This document shows, in pieces, positions 28,756-55,988 of a DNA stretch of 64,000 nt. Below the pieces are notes generated by a model. The model searched no databases. It was not told the origin of the DNA and saw only the letters and a program-made list of their open reading frames with translations. The stretch lies in the IMG/VR virus record IMGVR_UViG_3300046810_000338, positions 62,001 to 126,000 of that record. One strand, written 5' to 3'. The position numbers were made by a program, and so were the translations under genes. Each line of letters starts with the position of its first letter. The first letter of the stretch is position 1.

Positions 28756-30057
28756 ATGAAATTCAGGCCGAGTCCTAATGCACAAATGATTCAAGAGGCG
28801 ATTGCCCACCAGGGGCGGTCTGCTTTGTTCCGCGACATCTGCCTGATCTTTCGTGAAATCGAAGGGCTGCCTAGCAATGCCCTGGGTCCTGACCTACTGA
28901 CGAAGAAAGGTTTGGACAAAGTGATCGAGAAGTGGACAGGGCTTAAGATCCCTGTCAAGATTGATCAGGCGCTGTATGTCAATGCCTGGGTCTACCCACC
29001 TTACATCGACGCCAACCACGCGGTGCTCGCTGGCAGCAAAGCTGAGCGCGATGATTGGTGGTTGCTTGACTACATCAGTGAGCAATCCAACAAGGCCTTT
29101 GGCAAGTCCGAGTCCATCTTCGGTACGGTTGATCGTGAGAAGTCTCGTGTCTCCGGCGACTTCTGCAAGATTGAATGTCCGATGTTTGTGACACGCGGTC
29201 TGCTCCAGCACAAAGACGTTACGCCTGAGATGGCGACCACCACGATCCTCCATGAGATCGGTCACGTCTTTACCTACTTCGAGTTCATGGGCCGTGTGAC
29301 CACCTTCAACGGTGCTCTACAGGCAGCCTCCGAGGCGTTCTTCAAGTGCGAGAAACGCGAAGACCGTCTGAAGATTGTCCGCGATGTGGGCGACAAATTC
29401 GGCGTGGATAACGACGACCGTGAAGTGCTGACTAATGCCAAGAGCAAAGACGCGTTCATCACCGTTCTGGCTCGGGGCTACGTTATTGACCGCAAGTCTG
29501 GCCTGGGTTCCAGCATCTACGACATCACGTTGTGGGAATCGCTGTCCGACCAGTTCAGCATGCGTCATGGTTCCGGCGTAGATGGCGTCAAGATGATGGA
29601 CATTCTTTACCGTGACGGCATGCATGCCAGTTACATGTCCAACCTCAGCCACATCATCTTCACCCTGTTCAAGGTCCTGCTGTTCATCGCCAGCACGTTC
29701 TTCCTGTTCGGGCTGCCACTGCTGCTCTTGTTCGTTAACCCGGCTGCAAAGATCTATGACGAACCTCATGCTCGCATGCAACGTATGCGTAATGACTTCG
29801 TCGCTGGCCTCAAGTCCCCCACTATCAGTGCGGCGGAGAAGGCTCGGATCGCAGAAGACGTCAAAGACATCGACGTCATCATGAAAGATCTCGACGACAA
29901 GCGCGGACTCATTGAGTTGTTCTACACGGCTTGCACCCCAGGTGGTCGCCGTGAGTACAGCCAGCTGCGTTTCCAGCAGGAGATCGAATCGTTGGTAGCC
30001 AACGACCTGCTGGTTGCATCCACCCGTTTGTCCAACCTGGCTAATCGCCTCTCTTAA
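28756..30057 (+). CDS. Head/ejection protein (phiKZ gp84-like) with HExxH motif and hydrophobic segment
   Basis: HEIGH...ESLSDQF; hydrophobic IIFTLFKVLLFIASTFFLFGLPLLLLFV; synteny after the polymerase gene. Confidence 0.65.
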   Translation: MKFRPSPNAQMIQEAIAHQGRSALFRDICLIFREIEGLPSNALGPDLLTKKGLDKVIEKWTGLKIPVKIDQALYVNAWVYPPYIDANHAVLAGSKAERDDWWLLDYISEQSNKAFGKSESIFGTVDREKSRVSGDFCKIECPMFVTRGLLQHKDVTPEMATTTILHEIGHVFTYFEFMGRVTTFNGALQAASEAFFKCEKREDRLKIVRDVGDKFGVDNDDREVLTNAKSKDAFITVLARGYVIDRKSGLGSSIYDITLWESLSDQFSMRHGSGVDGVKMMDILYRDGMHASYMSNLSHIIFTLFKVLLFIASTFFLFGLPLLLLFVNPAAKIYDEPHARMQRMRNDFVAGLKSPTISAAEKARIAEDVKDIDVIMKDLDDKRGLIELFYTACTPGGRREYSQLRFQQEIESLVANDLLVASTRLSNLANRLS

Positions 30058-30067
30058 GGAGCGCCTC

Positions 30068-30529
30068 ATGGCTACGCTTAAACTCTCCCGTGCTAAATCG
30101 GCCGAACTGATCTCGGCTGTTAACTACCTGTTCTCGACCAACGGTGTCTCCAACGCTGACCGCACCCCAGCGGCTGAGTTGGTATTCGCTGAACTGATCG
30201 CCGTCACTCTGCCGTTGGCCAGTGAAGGTCAGAAGGCTGAAGACTTCTACCGTTCGACTCTGCTGGCGGGTGTCCGTGCGTTTCTGGATCAGCTGTGTGA
30301 AGTGGTCCAGATCAACCACGAACAATGCATGCTGGCAGTCTGGGGCGCTTACTCCTACCGTCAGTCGATCGTCGTGGTGAAGAATCTGTTCGACATTCGC
30401 CCTGACATTGGCCGCTACATCGGTAAGATGCCTCAGCGTCATGCTGACATCATCAAACGCTACCCAGTGCTGTCTGACAGCTACTGGGGCATCTCGGCAC
30501 TGATCTATGCCGATGGTGGCACCCTATGA
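30068..30529 (+). CDS. Probable head protein
   Basis: ATG 30068 with AAGGAG RBS; within head operon. Confidence 0.7.
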   Translation: MATLKLSRAKSAELISAVNYLFSTNGVSNADRTPAAELVFAELIAVTLPLASEGQKAEDFYRSTLLAGVRAFLDQLCEVVQINHEQCMLAVWGAYSYRQSIVVVKNLFDIRPDIGRYIGKMPQRHADIIKRYPVLSDSYWGISALIYADGGTL

Positions 30530-31854
30530 AAATGATGGCCCTGGAAGGGCTGGAAGCCGATCCAGCCATCATCTCATCGTCCATTGAGCGCATGCAGAAC
30601 GATCGTCTGGTGTGCCAATCCGATGTGGCTCCTTTCATCCAGCATTTCCCCATGAACATCTCCCTGGATAACTTCAGCGAAGAGCCTTCCGAGAAAGGCT
30701 TGGACATTGCCCTCGAAGGCATGTCCATGTTGTTCAAGGTCGCAGCCGGTGTTGCACTGGTAGGCGTTCTGGGTATCTGCATCTACAACTTCATCCGTAG
30801 CCGTCGTGCTGCCGAAACCATCGCAGAAGGTTCGGCGGTCACTGCTCGTTTGGGTAAGCTTACGCTGGAACTGGAACAAGACATCCATACCGCGCCTGGT
30901 TTCATTAACACCCGGACTCCTCTGTTGGGCAGCAATGAAATCCCTCACGGTCTGGGCCTGCACTTCAGTGGCGAAGTCAGCTACGCAGAATTCGCTGACA
31001 AGTTCTTCAGTGCTAAAGGCGTGGGTGCTATTGCCGGTATCAGTTCTGACCTGGCTATCAAGATCAACTATGGCGAGGTTCCAAGCGCCACCGATCAACT
31101 GATGGCTCCGATGAGCGACTACCTGGGCGATTTGGCTAAGCGGGTAACCGAACTGCGCAAGATCATTGCCGACATGCCTGGCGCGTTGAATGCCGGCCAC
31201 ATCGACAAGATCACCCAGCGGATCGTTGCAATCGATCTGAAGGTGCCTCGCGGTACAGTCCTGGGGTTGATCGAGCGTAACTTCGACAACCGCCTGCCGC
31301 CACCTCGTGGTAGCTTCCAGGCAGGCTCTGCTGCCATGTTTGAGGACCGGGTAGAAGCCTTGGCCAATTTGTATACCGAATTGTCCGAAGGTTCTCACCC
31401 CAACCAGAAAGGCGGCAACGCAGAAGAGAAAGCGACTACCGACTGGGTGTCTACCAACCTGTCTGGTCTGATTGGCCCGCTGGTGGATATCTCCACCCGC
31501 TGTGCCAAAGTTGGACTGTCTCCTTCTCTGTCCACCGGCCGCAGCATTGTGGCCGAATGTGAAGAGTTGAAGAAGAAGGTTGCAACCAGCGATTTCCCTG
31601 ATGCAGTGGATGCCGCGCTCAAGGTTGTACTGGAAGATGTCCGCATGGATTCTCTGGCTGCCATGAAACTGTTCGATGTGATCAACACCGAACAGCGACT
31701 GACGGCTAAGTGGGTTTCCTTTGTATTGCGCTGGACAGCAGAGCACGCCCGTGTGGTTGCACTGTTTACTCGCTCGGTATCTCCACCTGCTGCTGCCTCG
31801 TTGACCAAGAAGGCCGCTAACGCCCTCAAAGAAGCACAGAAACAGAAATTCTAA
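30526..31854 (+). CDS. Inner-head protein paralog with propeptide and hydrophobic helix
   Basis: ALE motifs (DIALE/GMS at residue 64) followed by a hydrophobic stretch. Confidence 0.7.
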   Translation: MKMMALEGLEADPAIISSSIERMQNDRLVCQSDVAPFIQHFPMNISLDNFSEEPSEKGLDIALEGMSMLFKVAAGVALVGVLGICIYNFIRSRRAAETIAEGSAVTARLGKLTLELEQDIHTAPGFINTRTPLLGSNEIPHGLGLHFSGEVSYAEFADKFFSAKGVGAIAGISSDLAIKINYGEVPSATDQLMAPMSDYLGDLAKRVTELRKIIADMPGALNAGHIDKITQRIVAIDLKVPRGTVLGLIERNFDNRLPPPRGSFQAGSAAMFEDRVEALANLYTELSEGSHPNQKGGNAEEKATTDWVSTNLSGLIGPLVDISTRCAKVGLSPSLSTGRSIVAECEELKKKVATSDFPDAVDAALKVVLEDVRMDSLAAMKLFDVINTEQRLTAKWVSFVLRWTAEHARVVALFTRSVSPPAAASLTKKAANALKEAQKQKF

Positions 31855-31863
31855 ACCCCACTG

Positions 31864-31894
31864 CCCCCTACAGGAGAACGCTCCTTGTAGGGGG
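31864..31894 (+). terminator. Stem-loop terminator
   Basis: CCCCCTACA-GGAG-AACG-CTCC-T-TGTAGGGGG. Confidence 0.7.
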
Positions 31895-31910
31895 TTATAA
31901 GGAGCTGGTA

Positions 31911-34900
31911 ATGGGCGACACAATTAACATTGATTCTCTGGCCAATGCCAGTGGGGCAGACTTGGCAAAATTCTTGGCTCAGAACAATCAAGTTCTGGCT
32001 GAAGTAACCCAACACGCCATCGACGTAAACATGCTGGGCGGTACCTCTCAGGCTCACGCACTGGGCTTTCAGGAATACCTTCCAGCCGACTTCTCTCTTG
32101 AATCGTTGTCTACCCATCTGTCCAAGAAGGGTTACACGATGGTTCAGGAATCTCTGGCTGCTGTTCTGCTGGTGGCCGGCGCAGCTGCAATCGTAGCAGG
32201 CGTAGGCATTCTGGCTTACAAGTTGATTCGTATGTCGATGGGTAAAGAGCCCAAGGCTTCCGAAGCACTCAAGCACGCCGAGGCTGCCAAGAAACTGGCA
32301 GCAATCATGACCAACCTGGACATGTCTCGCCTGCCGCCAGAGTTCCAAAAGCTGTTCACTGAATACGTTCAGGCCGAAACAGTTGCAGAACTGCGTAAGG
32401 GCTGGCCGGACAGTGACACTAACACCCGTGCTCTGGATGCGTTTATTCGTACCCGCCTGCAACAATCGAGCGCATCTGTTTATGCTGTTCGTATCCTGAC
32501 CCAATCGGACGCCCAGTTCTTGATGAACTCGGCTGGCAAACTGATCGACGCCATGGCCGATGGCCTGGCTCAGTTGGACAGTCGGTTCCTGCGTGTGGTT
32601 ATCGACAATCCGAAGATGTCTGGTCTGGAAGCATCGAAGCTTGCTGAATCCATCAGTGCATCGATGGGTACCAGTAACTTCGACAACGCTCAGAACTCGA
32701 TCATCGGCTGGGCTGCACACTACGGCGTTCAGACGGGCAATAGTGAGTTGCAAGACGCACTGCTGGCTTTCGAACAAGCCATGTTTACCCCAGCCTCTGC
32801 CGACCTCATCAATACGGTGGATCTGACCAAGAGCATGACCTTCTCTCCTCCGGCTAAACCCGTGGTTGAGAAACTGTACGCCAAGATCAAAGATCTGAAG
32901 AAACTGGGCGATCACCTGAAGCGTTCCGGCGATAACTTCAAACAGATCTCCAAGGACGCCTCCAACGACTTGACCACCCAGGTCAAGGCGGTGATTGATC
33001 AGGCTATGGCGGCGGTTGAACTGTCCGAACTGGTTACCCGGCTGGTGGACAAAGAAGTGGGTGCCATCCATCAAACCATTGGCGCTGTGGTTAACGGCGG
33101 CAAAGACATGCATGCAGGTATCATTGCAGTCATTGGCAAGATGGAAGACAAGGAAGAAGCGGCCCGTGTCAAACGCGAACTGTCTGCCTTGTTGGCCTCC
33201 GGCAAAGTGCCTACCATGCGCACTGAGGCGTTGGAAGACAATCGCCTTAGCCTGAATCAGGTTATGGTGTTGGAAGGTCGTAGCGGCATCCTGGACTTCC
33301 TCAAGCAGCTTGGCATCGTGCTGATGATCGGCATGGCTGTTGGCGTTCTGTATTCTGCCATCATGGCCATGTTCGGTGTAGCTTCCTTCTCGGCAGCGTG
33401 GGCAGGTGGTATTAACTACATCCTGGCCAACGGCAAGCGTGTAACGACCAAAGAAGCTTCTGATGCGTTGGCAGCGACGCTGAAGAACAACAGCGTTGGC
33501 CAGTACGGCGTTAACTCGATTACTCGCGGTAGCAACAACAACCTACCGTTTGTCGTCGACACCCGCATGATCGACAGTGGTTTCACCGTTGTGTCTGACG
33601 GCATCAAGAAAGCCATCGCTGCGTTCTCTGCCGGTGACTTCACAGGTAACCCTGAGCATGTCAATGCGGCAGTGATCCGAGCTTCCAACAACGGCAACCA
33701 TGTGTTGGACAATGCGATCAATACCCTCAAAGGTAAACTGATCGACTTGGGCCTGCCGATCAGCCGTAGCTCTGGCTCGGATGATCCAATCGCTGAGCTG
33801 CGAGCCAAAGAACACGAGTTCTCCAATCGCTGGTTCAATGGCAGCAACTGCGACTACTCGAAGTTCAACAACAACTTCACCACCAGTTGGATCGAGCGTT
33901 TCGATCCTAAGGCGCCTGAGAAGATCGAGAATTATGCCGAGCACATTGTGACCGACATGAAACGCTTTGCTAGCACCACTTCCGGTGTTAACAAAGAGAC
34001 CTTCAAAGAACTCAGCGACGAGGCTCTGGATGCCCACCACGACTTCACGCTGAAGATGGCCTACCTGGCTGCACTGTCCGGTGTTTACACCAAGATCACC
34101 AAGGCGGCTGTTAAAGACGTCCTGGGCGCCATCGGTGCACTGAAGTCGACCTTCCGTCATGGCAGTTCGTACAAGATGGTCGGCGAATCCCGTGATACGG
34201 ACTTCGACGAAGATGACGGCATGGATGCGTTGGATTACGACGACACCCACATTGACGGCATCATGGATCAGTCTGAAGTCATGGCCGATCTGAACGTCGA
34301 CGAGCAAGCTACTCTGGTTATGGAAAGCTGGGGCAAGCATGTTCAAACCGGGCTGATGGTGCTGGGTGCTTTGGCATTGGTTGGGGTGGGTGCTTTGATT
34401 CTGAAGTCCATCACCTCTGGCAAGTCCAAGCCGCATGCTGAGAAGGAACACTTCAAGGCTACGGCAGCAGGCATCGCTACCGGCAATGCGTTGGACCAAC
34501 TGGCCGACAAACTGGTTGAGAGCACCAACAACCTCAAAGCTGCGGTTCAGGACGAATCCAGCATTGTGGCCACCCAGGCGCAGGCTAAGGGTACACAAGA
34601 GTTCATCGGACGGGACGACGGGGCCAGCAACACTGCCGACAAACCTAACCCAGAAGGCCGTGCTGGTAATGACCATGCCGACATCATTTCCGATATCGAT
34701 GAACTGGGTGCTCTGGTTGAGAAGTGGGCCAACCTCAATTACGTAGGCCGCCTTAAACTCATCGGTCAGTCCACGGTGGTTTCCTATGGGGCCGTTGGTG
34801 CGTTGACCGCTGGTATGAACCCAGAGTTCAAGGACTTCCAGCAGAAAGGGTTGGAGGAAGTGGTCAAGTTTTTCACGTTCTGTGAGGACAAGATCTTTGG

Positions 34901-35567
34901 TCCAGTGAACGAAGCCCTGGCTTCTCACTTCCCACAAGACCGTTTGGCCGACATCCACGACGACGTTGTCGCAGCGATTGCTGACGCAATTGGACTTGGG
35001 GCAGTGCCTTCTGGTCTCACTGACGCTATGGCCGAAGAGATTGCCACGGTTACCAAACCTGCCGATGAGGCGGATTGGGCAGAGCTTGAGCGGGACATCA
35101 ATCCAAACGGCTACGGTTCTGGTGCAGATGACTACATGAAGCTGGTTAACGGTATCCAGAAAGGTATCGCCGAGACCACCGAGTTCGTCAACAAGGCCGA
35201 AGGGTCCCATGGTGATTTGGTTACTCGGGCAGCGGCTGAAGTCAAAGGTAGTCGTACCAAGGGGTCTTCGCTGCTCCTGCGTATCGATGAGTTCCGCCCT
35301 ACCTTCACCGAGGCGACTCGTTTCTTCCGGACCAGCATTCGAATGATGGAGGCACTCTGCACCTGTGTTGAGGAATCCATTCGTTTGCACCGCCGTGCTC
35401 AGCGTCAGGATGCTGCTGGCATCCAGGAGCAAGGTGAGAAGCTGGGTCGCATCAAAGGCAAGCTTCGTGCTAACAGCAACGACAAGTCCAAGTCTGGTGA
35501 CATCTTGGATAAGCTTGAAGAGATGCAAAAGGAATTGGAAGCCAGTCTGAAGAAGTCAGGTCTCTAA
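31911..35567 (+). CDS. Large inner-head protein, three-module polyprotein candidate
   Basis: 1218 aa; three x-x-E sites each followed by a hydrophobic helix; LPADFSLES motif as in neighbouring paralogs. Confidence 0.7.
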   Translation: MGDTINIDSLANASGADLAKFLAQNNQVLAEVTQHAIDVNMLGGTSQAHALGFQEYLPADFSLESLSTHLSKKGYTMVQESLAAVLLVAGAAAIVAGVGILAYKLIRMSMGKEPKASEALKHAEAAKKLAAIMTNLDMSRLPPEFQKLFTEYVQAETVAELRKGWPDSDTNTRALDAFIRTRLQQSSASVYAVRILTQSDAQFLMNSAGKLIDAMADGLAQLDSRFLRVVIDNPKMSGLEASKLAESISASMGTSNFDNAQNSIIGWAAHYGVQTGNSELQDALLAFEQAMFTPASADLINTVDLTKSMTFSPPAKPVVEKLYAKIKDLKKLGDHLKRSGDNFKQISKDASNDLTTQVKAVIDQAMAAVELSELVTRLVDKEVGAIHQTIGAVVNGGKDMHAGIIAVIGKMEDKEEAARVKRELSALLASGKVPTMRTEALEDNRLSLNQVMVLEGRSGILDFLKQLGIVLMIGMAVGVLYSAIMAMFGVASFSAAWAGGINYILANGKRVTTKEASDALAATLKNNSVGQYGVNSITRGSNNNLPFVVDTRMIDSGFTVVSDGIKKAIAAFSAGDFTGNPEHVNAAVIRASNNGNHVLDNAINTLKGKLIDLGLPISRSSGSDDPIAELRAKEHEFSNRWFNGSNCDYSKFNNNFTTSWIERFDPKAPEKIENYAEHIVTDMKRFASTTSGVNKETFKELSDEALDAHHDFTLKMAYLAALSGVYTKITKAAVKDVLGAIGALKSTFRHGSSYKMVGESRDTDFDEDDGMDALDYDDTHIDGIMDQSEVMADLNVDEQATLVMESWGKHVQTGLMVLGALALVGVGALILKSITSGKSKPHAEKEHFKATAAGIATGNALDQLADKLVESTNNLKAAVQDESSIVATQAQAKGTQEFIGRDDGASNTADKPNPEGRAGNDHADIISDIDELGALVEKWANLNYVGRLKLIGQSTVVSYGAVGALTAGMNPEFKDFQQKGLEEVVKFFTFCEDKIFGPVNEALASHFPQDRLADIHDDVVAAIADAIGLGAVPSGLTDAMAEEIATVTKPADEADWAELERDINPNGYGSGADDYMKLVNGIQKGIAETTEFVNKAEGSHGDLVTRAAAEVKGSRTKGSSLLLRIDEFRPTFTEATRFFRTSIRMMEALCTCVEESIRLHRRAQRQDAAGIQEQGEKLGRIKGKLRANSNDKSKSGDILDKLEEMQKELEASLKKSGL

Positions 35568-35612: not shown

Positions 35613-36935
35613 ATGATTGGTGAATACTTTTGTTTGGAAAGTATCGTCGATGAACTCTACGGGCAGGGTGACCTGTCGGTAGAAGACGAACAAGCCGGTT
35701 TGTTGGAAGAACCCGATATCAAGTCATTGGAAGACGATCTGTTCAAAGCGCAGGAACGCGAACAGGAACTCATCAACATTCAGGAAATGCTGGTAGAGCA
35801 GAGCGGGGTGTCCCGCGCTATGGCGGAGAACTTTCGCGACGTGCTGCCTGGTGATTTCGCAATGGAGTCCTTTACGGATCAGGTCACTAATACCAACCAT
35901 GTGATGTCCCTGGAGTTCATCGGCACGGCTATCAAGCTGGTGGCGGCTGCTGGGGTTGTTGCGGTACTGGGTGGTGTGGGTTACATCGTGTTCAAGATCA
36001 TGCGCTTCAAGAAGCGCTTGCCTGACATGCGAATGGACAAGGTGGTCACTGGTATGGTGAATACGGTGGAAGACAAACTCCGTACTGCCATCACCGAGTT
36101 GTCTCACCAGTTTCCTGAACTGGATCACCAAGAACTCAAGTGGACGCGTGAGGAAGGCATTGTTAATGCCGCTGTGCGTCAAGGCATGCTTGAGATCGAC
36201 ATGGACATGTTGTCTGGCAAGTACCATTCGTTGTCAGCCATTGCTGGCACCGATGCAATGACCCAGGCGGCTATCACCGAGAAGTTCTTCAAGTCCACGA
36301 TCTTCCCAGAACTGGACAAGATGATCAAGGCGGGCACAGGCAAGGATCTGGATAATGTATCCGGTAAACTTGCTGATGTCAAAATTGAAGATCGGATCAG
36401 TGCGCACCTGGAGCGGTTTGCGAGCGATAAGAAAATCTCGTTCAACAACCACTCTGACATTGCTCAGAAGTTTCGTGATCAGTTCTCCAAGCCTGTCTCT
36501 GCGTCTGAGTTGCCGGGTCGTCTGAAAGGCATTACGATCAACTCCACGGCGATGCCTGAGGAAGCGATCACCACCATGTTCAAAGCCCAGGGCGTGATGA
36601 CGTACTTGGCAGGCCAGATCCAAACCTACGAGAAGAAACTCAAGGGTAACAAGGATCTGCCTGGCGACTACGCGGCACAGGTCAAAGAGTTGTTGGAGAA
36701 GTGCAAACCTATCCTTAACGCTCTGGCCGATGTGTTCTCCATTGTTGAAACCGAAGTAGAATCGCACAAGCGCTGCTCCAAGGTTAAAGCGATGGCGGTC
36801 TCCAATGGCTTTAAAGCAGTTTCTGAGTTCTACCAAGAGCGCGCCAAGTCTGACCCGGATAACTCCGGCGAATACCGCAAGTGCGTTGGGTACCTCAAGA
36901 AGATGTTTGATCCAATCGCTGCTGCGTTGAAATAA
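35613..36935 (+). CDS. Inner-head protein paralog
   Basis: Acidic propeptide, GVSRAMAE..LPGDFAMESF..SLE/FIG, then hydrophobic helix. Confidence 0.72.
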   Translation: MIGEYFCLESIVDELYGQGDLSVEDEQAGLLEEPDIKSLEDDLFKAQEREQELINIQEMLVEQSGVSRAMAENFRDVLPGDFAMESFTDQVTNTNHVMSLEFIGTAIKLVAAAGVVAVLGGVGYIVFKIMRFKKRLPDMRMDKVVTGMVNTVEDKLRTAITELSHQFPELDHQELKWTREEGIVNAAVRQGMLEIDMDMLSGKYHSLSAIAGTDAMTQAAITEKFFKSTIFPELDKMIKAGTGKDLDNVSGKLADVKIEDRISAHLERFASDKKISFNNHSDIAQKFRDQFSKPVSASELPGRLKGITINSTAMPEEAITTMFKAQGVMTYLAGQIQTYEKKLKGNKDLPGDYAAQVKELLEKCKPILNALADVFSIVETEVESHKRCSKVKAMAVSNGFKAVSEFYQERAKSDPDNSGEYRKCVGYLKKMFDPIAAALK

Positions 36936-36982: not shown

Positions 36983-39919
36983 TTACTTCTGACTGCGTGC
37001 TGGCAAGTGCGGAGTGAAAACGATGTCGATGTCTTCTTCCACGGTGTACGTGTTGTCTGGTAGAGAGGTCAGTTTCTTACGGATAGAGAGGCGACCGTTA
37101 CCATCTGTCAGGGTTACCAACGGATAGTTGTAGATGCCACCCAGACCCGTAATCTCCAGACCCAATACATCGGCACCAGATTGTTCACGGACAGCCGTGG
37201 AGATATCCACGATGGCTACGCTGCTGCTTGCAAACTTGTCTGCGATGATACTGATGATGGTTTTACGAATGTTGGTTTTAAGGTCATCATTCTTGAACCC
37301 TACCTCTGTCATCAATACCAACACTTTGAGGGACTGCTCGGCGTAGATAGTAACATCAGCGCCTTCACCCACTACTGCATCCAGCTGACCGGTTGTGGCC
37401 AGTGGTTTGAAGTAGATGCTGGATTTCTCCAGAGCCTTCTCGTTGGTAGCCCCCATGTCCGTAGTTGCCCACGTAACCATGTTGGTGCAGATTTGTTGCA
37501 TGTAGTTGATAGACGATGCGTCGTTGGCAAAGTAGTACCGGCCATCAAACAACGTAAGGTCAATCTGGCGAGCCAACTGTCGAGGGTTCTTGAGAACCTT
37601 CTCACCGTTAACCAACACCAAGTCGCCTTTACGGTACTTGTACTGCGGGGAACCATCTGCCAAGAAGATCTGATCGCCTGCATTGTGCAACACGGTGTTG
37701 TGCAGCTCACCGTCGTCACCCAACGTAATCAACATGCCACCTGTCACCGGGTCTTCCACGTAGGTCGTTTCGGTGTAGTAGTCAAACTGGTCATCGGCGT
37801 ACAACTCGTAGTCGGCTGGCGTACCGACGGTACGACTGCCTGCCCACAGATACTTCAGTGGGCTGCCCAGAGAGATCGTAACCCGCTCGTGCAGTACCCC
37901 AATGGAATCGTAGGGCAGCATGTTGCGGTTTTTGAGCTCGTCAATTGGACCAGGCTTCATGTTCGGTGCGGTATACGCGGACACCAAGTAGATGATGTCA
38001 AACGTCGGTGCCAAACCGATCGGGTGATTCAGCGGGCCATCCCCAAACATCGAGAAGTTCAACAGCGTCAACGAGTCGTTAGAATCGATGTCGTAGTTGG
38101 TGACCAGGTTGAATTCCCAAACACGCTCACCCGACTCCTTAGTCAGGATAATGCCGTTCAGGTAAGCCATGTCCGACTCGCCCGGAGGCGTGTAGGCCAA
38201 TTGCACTTCTACCTGATCATCTTCCAAGCCTTGATACAGCGTTTGACTGCTGGTCTTGACGTGGATCAGATAACCGTTAGCTACCCGAGACACCACGATG
38301 GCAGAGGCGGCCTGCAAGTCCAACTGCACGCTAGGGTTAGCCTGCACAAATTGGCGAGCCGTTACCTGAGGGGCATCCAGGTAATAGATCCGCATAGCGA
38401 ATCCATCATTGGTTGCATCGAGTACGTTGTGGAAAGGAGAGAAGCGATAATCTGCCTCACTGATAGCCCGAGCAGTGGCCTCAGGTTTAAGCAGGAACAG
38501 ATCGGACTTCTCAGCTTCCGACACGATCTCAACGCCGCCATCCAAGTCACGGTACAGAATCGATGGATGCAGGGTAACGCGGTCGCCGTTGTGGCTGGTG
38601 CCTGCCAACCCATTCAGATCAGCCAGACGCAAGGACATGCTCTCTGTCGCCGTGGAGATTGGCGTCAGGGTGTACTTGTCCAAAGGCACTGGCATAACAC
38701 GGGTTGCGTTGAACACACGCTTGGTGATCGCATCCACGTCCACCACAGAGTCATAGCCGTCATCAGCCAGAGCCTGTTCACGGTTAACGTTGGTGATCGG
38801 CAGATTGATCGGACCCAAGTTGAAGTTGGTCACACGCTCGCGCACTTGTTCCAACGTCAGTGCTGCACGGCCCCCGCTGGTGTAGCCATCGGAGTACGCG
38901 CGGTACGTGGAGATCTTCATGAAAGGAGCGGTGTACAACCCATTGTCATCATTGTCCAGATCTTCCCACACCACACTCCATGCTTTGGAGTCAAAGTCAG
39001 TCAAGATCTTGTCATTGACGGCTTTGGTGGTGTAGATGTCAATGCGCAGCTCACCACTGATCAGGCCCAGCGTTTGATAGACTATCGGTACACGGACCGA
39101 CATCACACCAGAACCCACTTGCAGAAGCACCGTAGCCACCGATGGATTGAAGACCTGATCAGTGTGCGTGGTTGCCACTTCTTTCCAAGACGTCACAGCA
39201 CCATTCGTTACCCGCACATAGGCTCGGGCATAATGGAACTGGTCGGTGAAACTCAGCGTGGTGTTGAACACCCCCGCCGCGTTAGTCTGGAAGATTTGAC
39301 TGGTGATCGTCATCTGCGGAACAGTGGTCTGCAAACGAATGAAGCTGGTGCCACCGTAGTCGATCACATCGTAGTTAATGATGTTGCTCGCAATGGTGTG
39401 CAGTGCGCCATTGGGTGAAGTGCCGTACACCACAGACAACCCGCCGTTTACCGCAAAGGTAAACTCGATTGGGTATTCGAAGGTGAAAGTGGTGTTGTCC
39501 ACTGTGAACGAAGAGTTCTTAGGCATTACCAACTTACGCACGCCACCTGGTGTCACTTCTACGGCATAGCTGCGCACTTCCTCCAACGCCACCATCAAAC
39601 CGATAGGCGCCATAGAAGGCTCTGCAAAGATCCCCAGGTACGCTCTGTCGGCCATGTGCAGGTAGAGGTCTTCCATGGTCAGCGCAAGGCTTGCATAGCG
39701 CTTACGGGTCAGGACCTCCATGCCGATCATGTTGCCAGCGCCCACAGCGATCATGGCTTCGAACAGAAACATCGCAGGGTTGGTAGGGTCACAGTAACGA
39801 ATGTCCCCATCCATCACCTCTTCCATCTTGTTGAGGATGTCGCGCTGCTGGCCCATCGGGTCAAAGCGTGCCCAGTCCATTGCCTCAATGATCTCATCGC
39901 TGGTCAGTAGCGAACTCAT
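36983..39919 (-). CDS. Baseplate wedge-like structural protein (phiKZ gp87-like)
   Basis: 978 aa; DPTNPAMFLFE, LYLHMAD, GGRAALTLEQVRERV baseplate-J-like segment; synteny. Confidence 0.75.
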   Translation of the reverse strand: MSSLLTSDEIIEAMDWARFDPMGQQRDILNKMEEVMDGDIRYCDPTNPAMFLFEAMIAVGAGNMIGMEVLTRKRYASLALTMEDLYLHMADRAYLGIFAEPSMAPIGLMVALEEVRSYAVEVTPGGVRKLVMPKNSSFTVDNTTFTFEYPIEFTFAVNGGLSVVYGTSPNGALHTIASNIINYDVIDYGGTSFIRLQTTVPQMTITSQIFQTNAAGVFNTTLSFTDQFHYARAYVRVTNGAVTSWKEVATTHTDQVFNPSVATVLLQVGSGVMSVRVPIVYQTLGLISGELRIDIYTTKAVNDKILTDFDSKAWSVVWEDLDNDDNGLYTAPFMKISTYRAYSDGYTSGGRAALTLEQVRERVTNFNLGPINLPITNVNREQALADDGYDSVVDVDAITKRVFNATRVMPVPLDKYTLTPISTATESMSLRLADLNGLAGTSHNGDRVTLHPSILYRDLDGGVEIVSEAEKSDLFLLKPEATARAISEADYRFSPFHNVLDATNDGFAMRIYYLDAPQVTARQFVQANPSVQLDLQAASAIVVSRVANGYLIHVKTSSQTLYQGLEDDQVEVQLAYTPPGESDMAYLNGIILTKESGERVWEFNLVTNYDIDSNDSLTLLNFSMFGDGPLNHPIGLAPTFDIIYLVSAYTAPNMKPGPIDELKNRNMLPYDSIGVLHERVTISLGSPLKYLWAGSRTVGTPADYELYADDQFDYYTETTYVEDPVTGGMLITLGDDGELHNTVLHNAGDQIFLADGSPQYKYRKGDLVLVNGEKVLKNPRQLARQIDLTLFDGRYYFANDASSINYMQQICTNMVTWATTDMGATNEKALEKSSIYFKPLATTGQLDAVVGEGADVTIYAEQSLKVLVLMTEVGFKNDDLKTNIRKTIISIIADKFASSSVAIVDISTAVREQSGADVLGLEITGLGGIYNYPLVTLTDGNGRLSIRKKLTSLPDNTYTVEEDIDIVFTPHLPARSQK

Positions 39920-53678: not shown

Positions 53679-55988
53679 ATGAACGTGTTTAATTTGAGCG
53701 GAAGCGCATCGACGCCTCTGGATACTCTCGTCGCTGGTCTGAACCAGAACTTCGAGAAGCGCCGTAGCGAGCTGAACAACCCTGCTTTCCACCGTGGTCT
53801 GACCATGGCTGTTGAAAACCTGACCGAAACCGATCAGGCGAACCTGAGCAACAGCGTTAACTCGCTGACTGCCATGGTCATGGAATCCTTCGGCGAAGTT
53901 GCTGGCAAGGTCAACCTGACCGGCATGGGCGAAACCCCTGAGCAAACCGCTCTGAGCGCTGGCACCCACGGTCTGAACCAAAACCAGATCAACGCTGCTA
54001 CCGCCGTTGCAATGGCTTTCTCCAACCCAGTGGCTTACGCAACAGCTGCGCTGAACACCGCTACCGCTTCTGGCGCTAACGGCGTTGTGATGGCGTCCGA
54101 AGGTGTTTCGGGTAACCTGAACCACTACGACCGTACCGTCATGGCCCAGGAAGCGTTCTCCGAACAGCCTCTGCGCCAAATGATGGGTTGGTCCGTTACC
54201 CTGGCCGCTGCTGCCGCTCGTCAAGACGCCTTCGCTGAAGCCTGGTTCCCGACCATCGTGCTGACCCCAGCTGATGCCGGACTGACTCTGACCGTTGCAC
54301 GTTCGATGATCGTGAATGCTCCTATTCAGAACACTGACGGCGTGCCGAACAACCTCGACCGCGTCAACCTGATCGACGCCGCTCGTAACCCCGAGCTGCT
54401 GGAAGATGACTCGCTGCGCGTTCAGCCAGTTGTTCCTCAGGACCCGAACGCTGCCTCGCGCAAGTATTTCGTGCAGGGTTACGCGCCGACCAACGTCAAG
54501 ATCGAAGGCTTCGACGTCGCCGTCGCTCCTTTGGCTTTCGGCGAAGTGGGTCTGATCAACATCTCCACCCCAAGCCACATGATCCAACAAGGCGTCATGG
54601 AACTGACCGACGGTCTGGGCCAGGGCTCCCGTCTGGATTGGCTGGTTCTGAAACTGGGCCAAGACTTCGTCAAGGTCAACGTTCGCAACCTGGCTACCTC
54701 CGGCTTCCTGGCGGCTCAAGAAGGCGAAGCACCACGTCAAGTTCTGAGCTTCGAAGCTCGTGACCTGTCGCTGCATGGTGGCACCAAAACGACTTCCGGT
54801 GCGGCTATCGCCATTCCTGAAATCGCCGAGAACAAGCTGACCGTGCGTTACGCTGTTTCGGTTACCGGCTCCCTCGACTTGCAGAACACCGTCTGCCGCG
54901 TCAATGGCGAGATCATCGGTATCACTGCCATCCTCAACGAGGAAGGTGAAGAAATCAGCCAAACTGACGGCGTCGGCCTGGCAGTTGCTACCAAGTTCGC
55001 AGATCTGGCGAAACTGGTTGGTTGGTTCCCGTTCGCAAACCGTACGAACGAAAACAAACGTCAGCTCGGCAAACTGCTGGACGTGCTGGAACAGCGCTAC
55101 TGCTACGGCATCCCGCTGACTGCTCCAATCTCCGTATTGGCTCCAGTCGGTTCGGCCAAGCCTGCGCAAAACCTCGAAGCACTGATCAGCGCACAGCGCC
55201 GCCGTTGCTCGAACGCTGCCATCACCACCCTGCTGAACCACTCCGGCGAGCTGGCTGACTACATGGCCGGTACCCGTCGCAAGTCGGCGATGCCACAACT
55301 CGGTTCGGTTGGCCGTCTGGTTATCCACCCGTTCTACGAGAAGCGTGTTATTGACGCTGCTGAGTCCGTAATGACTCTGCGCGACAACGACAAGGCGATC
55401 GACATCGCTGCGTTGCTGACCAACACCATCAAAGACCTGGCGACCAACATGCTCATCCAATCCGCATACCCTGCGGCGCTGGAAGCATCGATCTCCGGTT
55501 CCAAGGCGGTGAAACTGCTGGTGGGTACCGACATCAAAATCGGTCAGCACTTGCAGGTTCAGGGTGATCTGCGGACCTTCGGTCCAATGTTCCAAAACCC
55601 AACCATCGTTACCACGCTGAACAAGAAGATGGACAACAAGATTCTGCTCACGCTGACCCGTGAGTCGGAAGCTAACGTTCCGGACATCCTCCAGTTCGGC
55701 TGGCACGCATTCATGCCGGAGCTCGTCTCCGTCGTGCAAGTGAGCCGTAACGGTAACACCCGTCAGGAAGCTACTGTGCAGTCGCGTTACCTGCACATCT
55801 GCAACCTGCCGATCCTGGCCGAAATCGAGGTCACCAACCTGTCCGCTGCTCTGCAAAACAAAGCATCGTGGACTGTTGATCTGACCGAGCCTGAGGATGG
55901 CGCCCCTGGCGTTACACCCAGCGCCCCTGTCGACGGTTCTGGCTCGCAAGGCGATAGCTCTGGTACCAACGTCGGTACTGGCGCTTAA
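53679..55988 (+). CDS. Major capsid protein (phiKZ gp120-like)
   Basis: 769 aa; propeptide site AQE/AF at residue 158; QDAFAEAWFPTIV and HICNLPIL segments; extreme codon bias; downstream of the gp119-like gene in phiKZ order. Confidence 0.93.
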   Translation: MNVFNLSGSASTPLDTLVAGLNQNFEKRRSELNNPAFHRGLTMAVENLTETDQANLSNSVNSLTAMVMESFGEVAGKVNLTGMGETPEQTALSAGTHGLNQNQINAATAVAMAFSNPVAYATAALNTATASGANGVVMASEGVSGNLNHYDRTVMAQEAFSEQPLRQMMGWSVTLAAAAARQDAFAEAWFPTIVLTPADAGLTLTVARSMIVNAPIQNTDGVPNNLDRVNLIDAARNPELLEDDSLRVQPVVPQDPNAASRKYFVQGYAPTNVKIEGFDVAVAPLAFGEVGLINISTPSHMIQQGVMELTDGLGQGSRLDWLVLKLGQDFVKVNVRNLATSGFLAAQEGEAPRQVLSFEARDLSLHGGTKTTSGAAIAIPEIAENKLTVRYAVSVTGSLDLQNTVCRVNGEIIGITAILNEEGEEISQTDGVGLAVATKFADLAKLVGWFPFANRTNENKRQLGKLLDVLEQRYCYGIPLTAPISVLAPVGSAKPAQNLEALISAQRRRCSNAAITTLLNHSGELADYMAGTRRKSAMPQLGSVGRLVIHPFYEKRVIDAAESVMTLRDNDKAIDIAALLTNTIKDLATNMLIQSAYPAALEASISGSKAVKLLVGTDIKIGQHLQVQGDLRTFGPMFQNPTIVTTLNKKMDNKILLTLTRESEANVPDILQFGWHAFMPELVSVVQVSRNGNTRQEATVQSRYLHICNLPILAEIEVTNLSAALQNKASWTVDLTEPEDGAPGVTPSAPVDGSGSQGDSSGTNVGTGA

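What the first reader, a model, noticed from the sequence alone, without database searches (positions are those of the whole stretch)
31911..35567. 1218 aa gene that looks like a three-unit polyprotein cut by the head protease
The same design repeats three times in one ORF: VQE/SLAAVLLVAGAAAIVAGVGILAYKL (residue 81), ALE..VLE/GRSGILDFLKQLGIVLMIGMAVGVLYSAIMAMF (443/456), and, after an internal acidic spacer DTDFDEDDGMDALDYDD, VME/SWGKHVQTGLMVLGALALVGVGALILKS (806). Each unit is about the size of the neighbouring single-unit paralogs. phiKZ-type head proteases are known to cut after small-x-Glu motifs; V-x-E would be a variant. Inference: fused paralogs released as three equimolar ejection proteins.
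Basis: partly seen in the sequence, partly recalled or inferred. Interest (0 to 1): 0.62.

Follow-up and report, generated by a model that had tools for sequence, protein, structure and literature searches.

The report
Three-unit capsid-protein precursor in a jumbo phage
A 1218-residue gene of an uncultured phiKZ-like giant phage strings together three modules, each starting with a conserved protease-type cut site and a membrane-like helix, so it is probably cut inside the phage head into three proteins related to the known capsid protein gp86.

Summary
Window 31911-35567 (+) is one 1218-aa ORF with three hydrophobic helices (81-105, 459-495, 811-836). Each follows an x-x-Glu: MVQE80, MVLE455, LVME805.

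It is not chance. Thirteen homologs of 1205-1344 aa (14-31% identity) all have exactly three such helices. Only 7 of the 76 Glu are conserved in at least 13 of 14 sequences, and 5 of those are the junction Glu. At the three helix-proximal sites P3 is A, S, G, V or I in 41 of 42 cells, and P4 is mostly Met.

The gene sits where phiKZ has gp86, which is cut at SQE-122 just before a helix, and where SPN3US has gp47 (ALE-111 before a transmembrane helix). Predicted structures of unit 1 and unit 3 both find phiKZ gp86 (8y6v_G) as the best of 48,161 solved chains (Z 13.7 and 12.2, about 280 of 297 residues aligned). Relatives carry unit 1 as a separate gene, or fuse it to another paralog type.

Three points remain open:
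- Unit 2's fold is untested.
- Cleavage itself is not shown.
- "Ejection" is uncertain, because gp86 and Goslar gp65 are resolved capsid vertex-binding proteins.

Verdict: a well-supported new variant (a polyprotein-like fusion) of a known processed head-protein family.

The parts
31911..35567 (+). 1218-aa ORF (P0001), the three-unit precursor
   Evidence: Full-length homologs of 1205-1344 aa.
31911..32150 (+). N-terminal propeptide, residues 1-80 (acidic, pI 4.6). It is shared with the single-unit paralogs and ends in MVQE80.
   Evidence: It corresponds to the removed propeptide of phiKZ gp86 (PMC5694885).
32139..32150 (+). Predicted cut site 1: M-V-Q-E80 | S81
   Evidence: E80 is invariant in 14/14. 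P3 is S, A or V in 14/14.
32151..33227 (+). Unit 1 mature part, residues 81-439 (about 38.5 kDa). Hydrophobic helix at 81-105, then a gp86-fold helical bundle.
   Evidence: AF2 pLDDT 84.3. Best of 48,161 PDB chains is 8y6v_G, Z 13.7. HHalign to paralogs 99.9%.
33228..33275 (+). Spacer 2, residues 440-455, between conserved E439 and E455 (MVLE455 | G456). Modelled as disordered.
   Evidence: pLDDT below 50 for residues 432-455.
33276..34187 (+). Unit 2, residues 456-759 (about 32.7 kDa). Long hydrophobic segment at 459-495. Fold not determined.
   Evidence: HHalign is only 45-78% with the helix and nil without it.
34188..34325 (+). Spacer 3, residues 760-805. It has 17 acidic residues in 46 and 1 basic. 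It is bounded by KMVGE759 | S and LVME805 | S. Length varies from 45 to 82 aa in homologs.
34326..35564 (+). Unit 3, residues 806-1218 (about 44.3 kDa). Helix at 811-836, then a gp86-like helical bundle.
   Evidence: AF2 pLDDT 78.9. 8y6v_G is the top hit, Z 12.2, 278/297 aligned. Its N-terminus resembles the SPN3US gp47 mature N-terminus.
30526..31854 (+). 442-aa single-unit paralog (MMALE7 | G, then IALE63 | G plus helix)
   Evidence: Conserved in relatives.
35613..36935 (+). 440-aa single-unit paralog (MSLE101 | F plus helix)
28756..30057 (+). phiKZ gp84 homolog (433 aa). It marks the conserved head-gene block.
   Evidence: BLAST E 7e-17 to gp84. phrog_2767.
36983..39919 (-). phiKZ gp87 homolog (978 aa), the other flank of the gp86 locus
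53679..55988 (+). Major capsid protein. Its propeptide carries the same motif type (MAVE46 | N, MVME69 | S).
   Evidence: Pfam PhiKZ_MCP E 6e-157. Sequence.

Best explanation
The ORF encodes a head-internal precursor of a phiKZ-like jumbo phage, built from three tandem modules of the gp86/gp47 kind.

**Proposed mechanism**
- The roughly 80-aa acidic N-terminal propeptide, shared with the single-unit paralogs, takes the whole chain into the prohead.
- The gp175-type prohead protease then cuts after conserved Glu residues in M-(A/S/G/V)-x-E | (S/G/N) motifs.
- The cuts fall at E80, E455 and E805, and probably also at E439 and E759. The last two would excise a 16-aa spacer and a 46-aa acidic spacer.
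- This would leave three fragments of about 38-40, 33 and 44 kDa in a 1:1:1 ratio, each beginning with a strongly hydrophobic Gly/Ala-rich helix.
- Units 1 and 3 adopt the elongated helical-bundle fold of phiKZ gp86, a protein of the inner capsid vertex-binding complex.
- The fragments are therefore expected to line the inside of the capsid. Like SPN3US gp47, they may leave with the DNA and insert their helices into the host membrane.

**What is shown**
- The architecture, its conservation and the locus.
- The fold of units 1 and 3.
- The presence of the protease.
- Fusion and fission of units among relatives.

**What is inferred**
- The cleavage itself and the exact sites.
- The stoichiometric role of the fusion.
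- Capsid location and ejection.
For: 1. **Locus.** The gene order gp84 - gp85 position - [442 | 1218 | 440] - gp87(-) - gp88(-) - gp89 - gp90 - gp91 matches phiKZ, where the bracket holds gp86 alone.
2. **Known family design.** phiKZ gp86 is cut at SQE-122 directly before its first helix. SPN3US gp47 is cut at AVE-79 and expected to be cut at ALE-111, directly before a predicted transmembrane helix (PMC5694885; sequences).
3. **Conservation.** Fourteen proteins of 1205-1344 aa each have exactly three hydrophobic segments, starting 0-10 aa after a conserved Glu. Only 7 of 76 Glu are conserved in at least 13 of 14, and 5 of these are E80, E439, E455, E759 and E805. M452 (P4) is invariant.
4. **Residue at P3.** At E80, E455 and E805 it is A, S, G, V or I in 41 of 42 cells, so V and A interchange.
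5. **Same motif elsewhere in this phage.** It occurs in the protease's own C-terminal region (MALE197 | S, MGLE233 | S), the capsid-protein propeptide (MAVE46, MVME69), an internal-head-protein paralog (MALE15) and the 442-aa neighbour (MMALE7).
6. **Protease.** A gp175 homolog is present (34% identity, E 8e-43).
7. **Fold.** Unit 1 and unit 3 models both have 8y6v_G (gp86, identity confirmed) as the best hit of 48,161 chains. Unit 1: Z 13.7, rmsd 4.8 A, 283/297 aligned, next Z 8.3. Unit 3: Z 12.2, rmsd 4.8 A, 278/297 aligned.
8. **Linkers.** The junction 432-455 is modelled as disordered. Spacer 3 is hyper-acidic and variable in length.
9. **Relatives.**
   - L014 has four separate single-unit genes, with the unit-1 ortholog free-standing.
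   - L010 and one ENA contig have two-unit fusions.
   - The second unit of those fusions is homologous to free-standing 440-type genes (E 1e-28) but keeps only a short spacer in place of their 100-130-aa propeptide.
10. **Precedent.** phiKZ gp162 and gp93 are cut so that more than one fragment stays in the capsid (PMC11297242).
Against: - There are no proteomic or structural data for this phage, so cleavage is inferred from sequence only.
- V at P3 has not been reported for the phiKZ (S/A/G-x-E) or SPN3US (A-x-E) proteases in the papers read.
- P3 at E439 and E759 is often R, K, H or M in the closer homologs.
- One homolog (P0007) has Q instead of E at junction 2.
- Unit 2 has no detectable similarity to gp86-type units outside its helix, and its fold was not modelled.
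- The Z score for unit 3 stands only 0.5 above unrelated helical bundles. Its distinction is coverage, not Z.
- No sequence-level similarity to gp86 or gp47 is detectable by BLAST or HMM.
- Acidic residues flanking transmembrane helices can be conserved for topological reasons.
Confidence: 0.65

Rival explanations
1. Only the N-terminal propeptide is removed, at E80. The rest stays as one roughly 122 kDa protein with three membrane-type helices. The junction Glu and Met are conserved for folding or membrane-topology reasons, not as protease sites.
For: No direct evidence of internal cleavage exists. P3 at E439 and E759 is not consistently small. One homolog has Q at junction 2. Goslar gp65 is a longer two-domain gp86 homolog described as one chain (bioRxiv 10.64898/2026.04.21.720040).
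Against: - The three helix-proximal junctions carry the same M-small/V-x-E | S/G tetrapeptide as site 1, the protease's own tail and the capsid-protein propeptide.
- The spacers are disordered, hyper-acidic and variable in length, as excised peptides are.
- The same unit types occur as separate precursors with the same site in relatives.
Confidence: 0.22
2. The units are made separately by internal translation starts at the conserved Met codons (M452, M756, M804), not by proteolysis.
For: M452 is invariant, and M756 and the Met near 805 are nearly so.
Against: - No Shine-Dalgarno-like sequence precedes these codons, whereas the genuine starts of the 1218-aa and 440-aa genes have AGGAG and GGAG.
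- The equivalent P4 position at site 1 is M, I, V or T, and lies 75-115 residues into the protein.
- Met at P4 also occurs in sites deep inside other head proteins.
Confidence: 0.03
3. It is not a virion protein. Instead it is a membrane protein made for the infected cell (lysis, superinfection exclusion or compartment formation), or a tape-measure-like tail protein.
For: It has three transmembrane-like helices with basic residues after them. There are weak structural resemblances to helical pore-forming toxins (Z about 7) and to some tape-measure entries.
Against: - It lies inside the conserved head-gene block, at the gp86 position.
- Units 1 and 3 have the gp86 fold.
- It shares a propeptide with paralogs of a family known to be head proteins.
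- A separate 2338-aa ORF elsewhere in the genome has the size of the phiKZ gp181-type tail protein.
Confidence: 0.06
4. The long ORF is an assembly or frameshift artefact that joins three neighbouring genes.
For: The genome is a metagenomic record.
Against: Thirteen independent homologs from other samples, at 14-33% identity, have the same uninterrupted 1205-1344-aa architecture, and the same neighbours where context was fetched (L007, L008, L009).
Confidence: 0.01

Closest known systems
phiKZ gp86 (and 201phi2-1 gp148): inner head protein of the capsid vertex-binding complex, cut by gp175 at SQE-122
   Same: - Same genomic slot between the gp85 and gp87 homologs.
- An N-terminal propeptide ending in x-x-E directly before the first helix of the mature protein.
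- The same elongated helical-bundle fold for units 1 and 3 (Z 13.7 and 12.2, about 280 of 297 residues).
   Different: - gp86 is one 422-aa unit. Here three units are fused in one gene, and two more single-unit genes flank it, giving five units at the locus.
- The first helix is a strongly hydrophobic transmembrane-type helix here, but amphipathic in gp86.
- No sequence similarity is detectable.
- P3 is V here and S in gp86.
SPN3US gp47 (essential head 'ejection' protein) and its Goslar counterpart gp65
   Same: - Same locus.
- Two cut sites about 30 aa apart (AVE-79, ALE-111), the second directly before a predicted transmembrane helix.
- The mature N-terminus after ALE-111 (S-W-A-N-A-G-K...) resembles that of unit 3 (S-W-G-K-H... 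here, S-W-S-N-G-A-K... in distant homologs).
- Goslar gp65 shows that longer, multi-domain versions of gp86 exist.
   Different: - gp47 is a single 577-aa chain with one hydrophobic helix.
- No internal repeat of site plus helix has been described.
- Goslar gp65 is reported as one chain with an added domain, not as a cut polyprotein.
phiKZ gp162 and gp93: head proteins cut internally so that several fragments stay in the capsid
   Same: The head protease cuts inside the protein and separates parts that each remain in the capsid (gp162 fragments I and II; PMC11297242).
   Different: Those fragments are dissimilar pieces of one protein. They are not tandem paralogous units that each carry their own site and hydrophobic helix.
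T4 gp21 prohead protease substrates (L/I-x-E sites, short capsid-targeting sequences)
   Same: Cleavage after Glu, with a defined residue at P3. The propeptide is used to target proteins into the prohead (as summarised in PMC5694885).
   Different: T4 propeptides are 10-20 aa. T4 has no known tandem multi-unit internal protein of this kind.

Membership tests
phiKZ gp86 / SPN3US gp47 / Goslar gp65 head-protein family | Gene lies between the gp84-gp85 homologs and the divergently oriented gp87-gp88 homologs | tested here: met
   The same order is found in relatives L007, L010 and L014.
phiKZ gp86 / SPN3US gp47 / Goslar gp65 head-protein family | N-terminal propeptide ending in a small-x-Glu protease motif immediately before the first helix of the mature protein | tested here: met
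   MVQE80 | S plus helix. Homologs have S or A at P3 in 12 of 14, and E80 is invariant. Actual cleavage is not shown.
phiKZ gp86 / SPN3US gp47 / Goslar gp65 head-protein family | Mature part folds as the elongated helical bundle seen in 8y6v chain G | tested here: met
   - Unit 1: Z 13.7, rmsd 4.8 A, 283/297 aligned, next hit Z 8.3.
- Unit 3: top hit Z 12.2, 278/297 aligned, but only 0.5 above other helical bundles.
- Unit 2: not modelled.
phiKZ gp86 / SPN3US gp47 / Goslar gp65 head-protein family | Detectable sequence homology to gp86 or gp47 | tested here: not met
   There is no BLAST hit to gp86, no HMM hit to the gp86 chain in the PDB and no tblastn hit in GenBank phages. Accepted members of the family are themselves at or beyond this limit (PMC5694885).
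phiKZ gp86 / SPN3US gp47 / Goslar gp65 head-protein family | Present in virions and processed by the prohead protease | not testable with these tools
   Uncultured phage. Only the protease gene could be shown.
Protease-processed polyprotein (several retained products from one chain) | Internal cleavage sites between independently folding units | tested here: inconclusive
   Conserved site-like motifs lie at both internal junctions, and the linker is modelled as disordered. No cleavage data exist.
Protease-processed polyprotein (several retained products from one chain) | Units occur as separate genes in relatives | tested here: inconclusive
   - Unit-1 type: yes (P0013 in L014, and P0015).
- 440-type unit: both free-standing and fused.
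- Units 2 and 3: never found separate among 1.84 billion representatives.
Phage ejection (E) proteins with membrane-inserting helices | Leaves the capsid with the DNA and acts at or in the host membrane | not testable with these tools
   Only the transmembrane-type helices are shown. phiKZ gp86 and Goslar gp65 are seen fixed to the capsid vertex.
Tail tape-measure protein | Encoded among tail genes, with a very long helical protein matching tail length | tested here: not met
   The gene lies in the head-gene block. The fold matches gp86. A separate 2338-aa ORF exists elsewhere in the genome.

The most novel reading that the evidence does not exclude
The five gp86-fold units at this locus (three in the fusion, two flanking) are delivered into the cell with the DNA. 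Their Gly/Ala-rich N-terminal helices, exposed only after head-protease cutting, would assemble into a hetero-oligomeric membrane structure. This could be a conduit across the inner membrane, or the seed of the early-infection lipid vesicle of nucleus-forming phages. On this reading the fusion fixes a 1:1:1 ratio and lets units 2 and 3 enter the prohead on unit 1's single targeting propeptide.
Probability: 0.15. Interest if true: 0.75.

Novelty: new variant of a known kind. Interest (0 to 1): 0.5.

Why it matters
Processing of giant-phage head proteins after small-x-Glu is known. The gp86/gp47 slot is known to be fast-evolving and essential in SPN3US.

The new elements here are:
- a conserved tandem fusion of such units, each keeping its own cut site and membrane-type helix;
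- a locus that varies among relatives from one to five units, by duplication, fusion and fission.

If the cuts are confirmed, this would be a clear case of a polyprotein strategy in a tailed phage, used to load several related proteins into the capsid in fixed ratio on one targeting propeptide. It would also widen the known specificity of this protease family (V tolerated at P3, Met preferred at P4). Finally, it gives a defined set of virion proteins with transmembrane helices to test for a role in the poorly understood first minutes of infection by phiKZ-like phages.

Tried and rejected
**Searches that found nothing**
- Pfam and PHROGs scans of the ORF and its two flanking paralogs.
- megablast and tblastn against 50,697 GenBank phage records with the whole protein, unit 1 and the distant paralog.
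- Peptide-pattern scan of IMG/VR.
- The word-index protein search, which returned only the query itself.
- Profile search of PDB sequences, which gave only chance helical hits.
- The protein-atlas feature search for unit 2 (score 0.76, below the level of a lead).

**Weak or negative comparisons**
- Foldseek against the PDB and BFVD gave no hit at E of 0.001 or better. The BFVD lists for both units are nonetheless headed by proteins of phiKZ-like phages.
- HHalign of the soluble parts of units 2 and 3 against each other and against the paralog profiles gave no usable signal once the helix was removed.

**Ideas rejected**
- Internal translation starts: no ribosome-binding sites precede the conserved Met codons.
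- Assembly artefact: independent homologs have the same architecture.
- The long antisense ORFs inside the gene (33543-35528 and 31851-33113, minus strand) as real genes. They lie in the codon-aligned antisense frame, and that frame is broken up in the L007 homolog.
- Membership in the helical pore-forming toxins (ClyA, AhlB): Z only about 7, with half the coverage.

- Read-mapping tools and the complex predictor were not used, because neither bears on proteolysis.
Full report
**What is in the sequence.** Window 31911-35567 (+) is a single 1218-aa ORF (protein P0001). Kyte-Doolittle scanning finds three strong hydrophobic segments at 76-106, 459-495 and 811-836. Each follows directly on an x-x-Glu tetrapeptide: MVQE80 | S, MVLE455 | G and LVME805 | S. 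The stretch 760-805 is a 46-residue spacer with 17 acidic residues and one basic residue.

**Genomic setting.** The window is bases 62001-126000 of a 228.5-kb viral metagenomic record. This is a phiKZ-like jumbo phage.
- The 978-aa minus-strand gene is a homolog of phiKZ gp87.
- The next gene hits the Pfam tail-tube family that phiKZ gp88 belongs to.
- The 433-aa gene matches gp84 (E 7e-17), and the 449-aa and 296-aa genes match gp89 and gp90.
- The 183-aa gene is a gp91 vertex-binding protein, and the major capsid protein lies at 53679-55988.

In this conserved order, phiKZ has the single gene gp86 between gp85 and gp87. The window has three genes there: 442 aa, 1218 aa and 440 aa.

**What is known about that slot.**
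- phiKZ gp86 is an inner head protein cut by the prohead protease gp175 at SQE-122. 201phi2-1 gp148 is cut at SQE-113.
- SPN3US gp47, in the same slot, is an essential head protein cut at AVE-79 and expected to be cut at ALE-111. Its mature N-terminus is a predicted transmembrane helix, and the authors proposed that it is ejected and meets the host membrane (PMC5694885).
- In the gp86 sequence, residue 122 lies directly before the first long helix. In gp47, ALE-111 is followed by S-W-A-N-A-G-K and a hydrophobic helix.
[quoted passage not shown] It also placed the longer Goslar homolog gp65 there (bioRxiv 10.64898/2026.04.21.720040).
- The SPN3US protease cuts after A-x-E with a preference at P4 (PMC10052503). 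phiKZ gp162 and gp93 are cut so that more than one fragment stays in the capsid (PMC11297242).

**Paralogy.** The 442-aa and 440-aa neighbours, and a fourth 446-aa gene far away in the genome (211067-212407, minus strand), share unit 1's leader and helix. Their junctions read IALE | G, MSLE | F and MTQE | A, each followed by a helix. Profile comparison shows that unit 1 (residues 1-455) is homologous to these single-unit proteins over its whole length: 99.9% (E 2e-34) against the mixed profile, and 97-99.6% against each subtype. Units 2 and 3 score 45-90% only when the junction and helix are included. With the helix removed they score nothing useful.

**Relatives.** Annotated phages and the word-index search gave nothing. 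An exhaustive HMMER search of 1.84 billion representatives found 23 relatives:
- seven of 1210-1291 aa at 29-33% identity, matching end to end or nearly so;
- six of 1205-1344 aa that are more distant;
- two of about 880 aa;
- eight of 425-508 aa.

In the alignment of the 14 long proteins only 21 columns are invariant. Among them are E80, E439, M452 and E805, while E455, M756 and E759 are nearly invariant. Only 7 of the 76 Glu in the query are conserved in at least 13 of 14 sequences, and five of those are these junction Glu. Every one of the 14 has exactly three hydrophobic segments, each starting 0-10 residues after E80, E455 or E805.

| Site | Residues at P3 (across 14 sequences) | Residues at P4 |
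|---|---|---|
| E80 | S, A or V | M, I, V or T |
| E455 | A, V, G or S, with one D | M in all 14 |
| E805 | A, V or I | M in 12 |

P1' is S, G, N, A or K. Valine therefore sits where homologs have the canonical small residues.

Two further conserved Glu look like the upstream ends of excised spacers:
- E439 lies in M-x-x-E | S, 12-18 residues before E455.
- E759 lies in K-M-x-G-E | S here, and in M-A-T-E | S in the distant group.

P3 at these two sites is less regular. The spacer between E759 and E805 varies from 45 to 82 residues and is acidic in all 14.

**The motif elsewhere in this phage.** A gp175 homolog lies at genome 190492-191292 (34% identity, E 8e-43). Its C-terminal region has MALE197 | S and MGLE233 | S, where self-cleavage would be expected. 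Other head proteins carry the same motif type:
- the capsid-protein propeptide has MAVE46 | N and MVME69 | S;
- an internal-head-protein paralog (Pfam phiKZ_IP) has MALE15 | N;
- the 442-aa neighbour has MMALE7 | G.

So M-(A/V/S/G/T)-x-E | small recurs in this phage's head proteins, and V at P3 is not confined to the finding. None of these sites is experimentally verified.

**Structure.**
- *Unit 1.* A 21-sequence alignment gave an AlphaFold2 model of residues 81-455 with mean pLDDT 84.3 and pTM 0.83. Residues 432-455, the second junction, are below pLDDT 50. An alignment-free structural search of 48,161 PDB representatives put 8y6v chain G first: Z 13.7, rmsd 4.8 A, 283 of 297 residues aligned, with the next hit at Z 8.3. 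That chain is phiKZ gp86.
- *Unit 3.* The model of residues 806-1218 has pLDDT 78.9. It also has 8y6v_G first: Z 12.2, rmsd 4.8 A, 278 of 297 aligned. Here the margin in Z is small (next hit 11.7). The other hits, however, align about half as many residues or have rmsd near 10 A.
- In both cases the first residues of the unit align with the first resolved residues of mature gp86.
- Foldseek was insignificant against the PDB and BFVD. The two BFVD lists still share several entries from phiKZ-like phages.

**Fusion and fission at the locus.** The interval between the gp85 and gp87 homologs differs among relatives.

| Source | Genes in the interval |
|---|---|
| L007 | 442, 1210, 444 |
| L009 | partial upstream ORF (261 aa, contig end), 1208, 437 (contig too short to show the flanks) |
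| ENA contig | 438, 886 |
| L010 | 441, 875, 425, 374 |
| L014 | 439, 425, 495, 493 (all single units) |

- In L014 the 425-aa gene (P0013) is the free-standing ortholog of unit 1 (HHalign 99.7%).
- In the 875-aa protein of L010, residues 501-870 are homologous to free-standing 440-type proteins (E 1e-28 to P0018).
- Those free-standing proteins carry a propeptide of about 130 aa. The fused copy is preceded only by a spacer of about 25 residues ending in MVME | S plus the helix.
- The same unit type is therefore delivered either as its own precursor or as a downstream unit of a fusion.
- Units 2 and 3 of the 1218-aa type were not found as separate genes.

**Interpretation.** The most economical reading is a head-internal precursor whose single N-terminal propeptide brings three modules into the prohead. 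There the protease cuts at the three helix-proximal sites, and probably at two spacer-start sites. This would give products of about 38-40, 33 and 44 kDa in equal numbers. The fusion would then fix stoichiometry and spare units 2 and 3 a targeting propeptide of their own. This last point is inference from the short spacers.

Units 1 and 3 have the gp86 fold, so a location on the inner capsid surface is expected. Unlike gp86, the helices here are of the true transmembrane type, as in SPN3US gp47, so later insertion into the host membrane is plausible but untested.

The main rival is that only the first site is used and the protein stays as one three-helix chain (about 0.2). Internal translation starts lack ribosome-binding sites. 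An assembly artefact is excluded by the homologs.

**Verdict.**
- cleavage is not shown;
- unit 2 is unresolved;
- 'ejection' is uncertain.

This is a new variant of a known kind, namely a tandem polyprotein-like form of the gp86/gp47 head-protein family in an expanded locus. It is of moderate interest to phage structural biology.

Noticed in passing
window 28756-30057 (+): The gp84 homolog (433 aa) carries an H-E-I-G-H motif, which phiKZ gp84 shares (H-E-I-G-H-C-W context), plus a strong C-terminal hydrophobic segment at 297-331. This suggests a zinc-metallopeptidase-like head protein. There is no Pfam hit.
   Followed up: partly
genome 211067-212407 (-), outside the window (would be window 149067-150407): A fourth single-unit paralog (446 aa, P0024) with MALE69 | S and MTQE85 | A plus a helix lies far from the main locus. 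The adjacent 437-aa ORF has MALE26 | A near its N-terminus.
   Followed up: partly
window 33543-35528 (-) and 31851-33113 (-): Very long antisense ORFs (661 and 420 aa) lie inside the 1218-aa gene, in the codon-aligned antisense frame. The same frame is broken into pieces of 300 aa or less in the L007 homolog, so they are shadow ORFs of a gene rich in G+C at third codon positions.
   Followed up: yes
window 53679-55988 (+): The major capsid protein (Pfam PhiKZ_MCP from residue 101) has a propeptide of about 100 aa with MAVE46 | N, MVME69 | S and GMGE85 | T. These are likely maturation sites of the same type as in the finding.
   Followed up: partly
window 61685-64000 (-), continuing to genome 126426: A 913-aa ORF has MTLE213 | S and MVLE275 | G in its N-terminal third. 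In size and pattern it recalls the long processed portal propeptide of SPN3US. It had no Pfam hit, so its identity is unverified.
   Followed up: partly
genome 190492-191292 (+), outside the window: The prohead protease homolog (266 aa) has two motif-conforming sites in its own C-terminal region (MALE197 | S, MGLE233 | S), consistent with self-processing as in gp175 and SPN3US gp245.
   Followed up: partly
L014 8260-8290: In the unfused relative, the stop of the unit-1-type gene overlaps the start of the next unit gene (ATGA). The neighbouring unit genes thus abut with no intergenic gap.
   Followed up: no
window 30014-30529 (+): The ORF at the gp85 position is listed from a TTG that overlaps the gp84 homolog. 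Relatives have 148-160 aa here, so the real start is probably the internal ATG (M19, about 30068).
   Followed up: no
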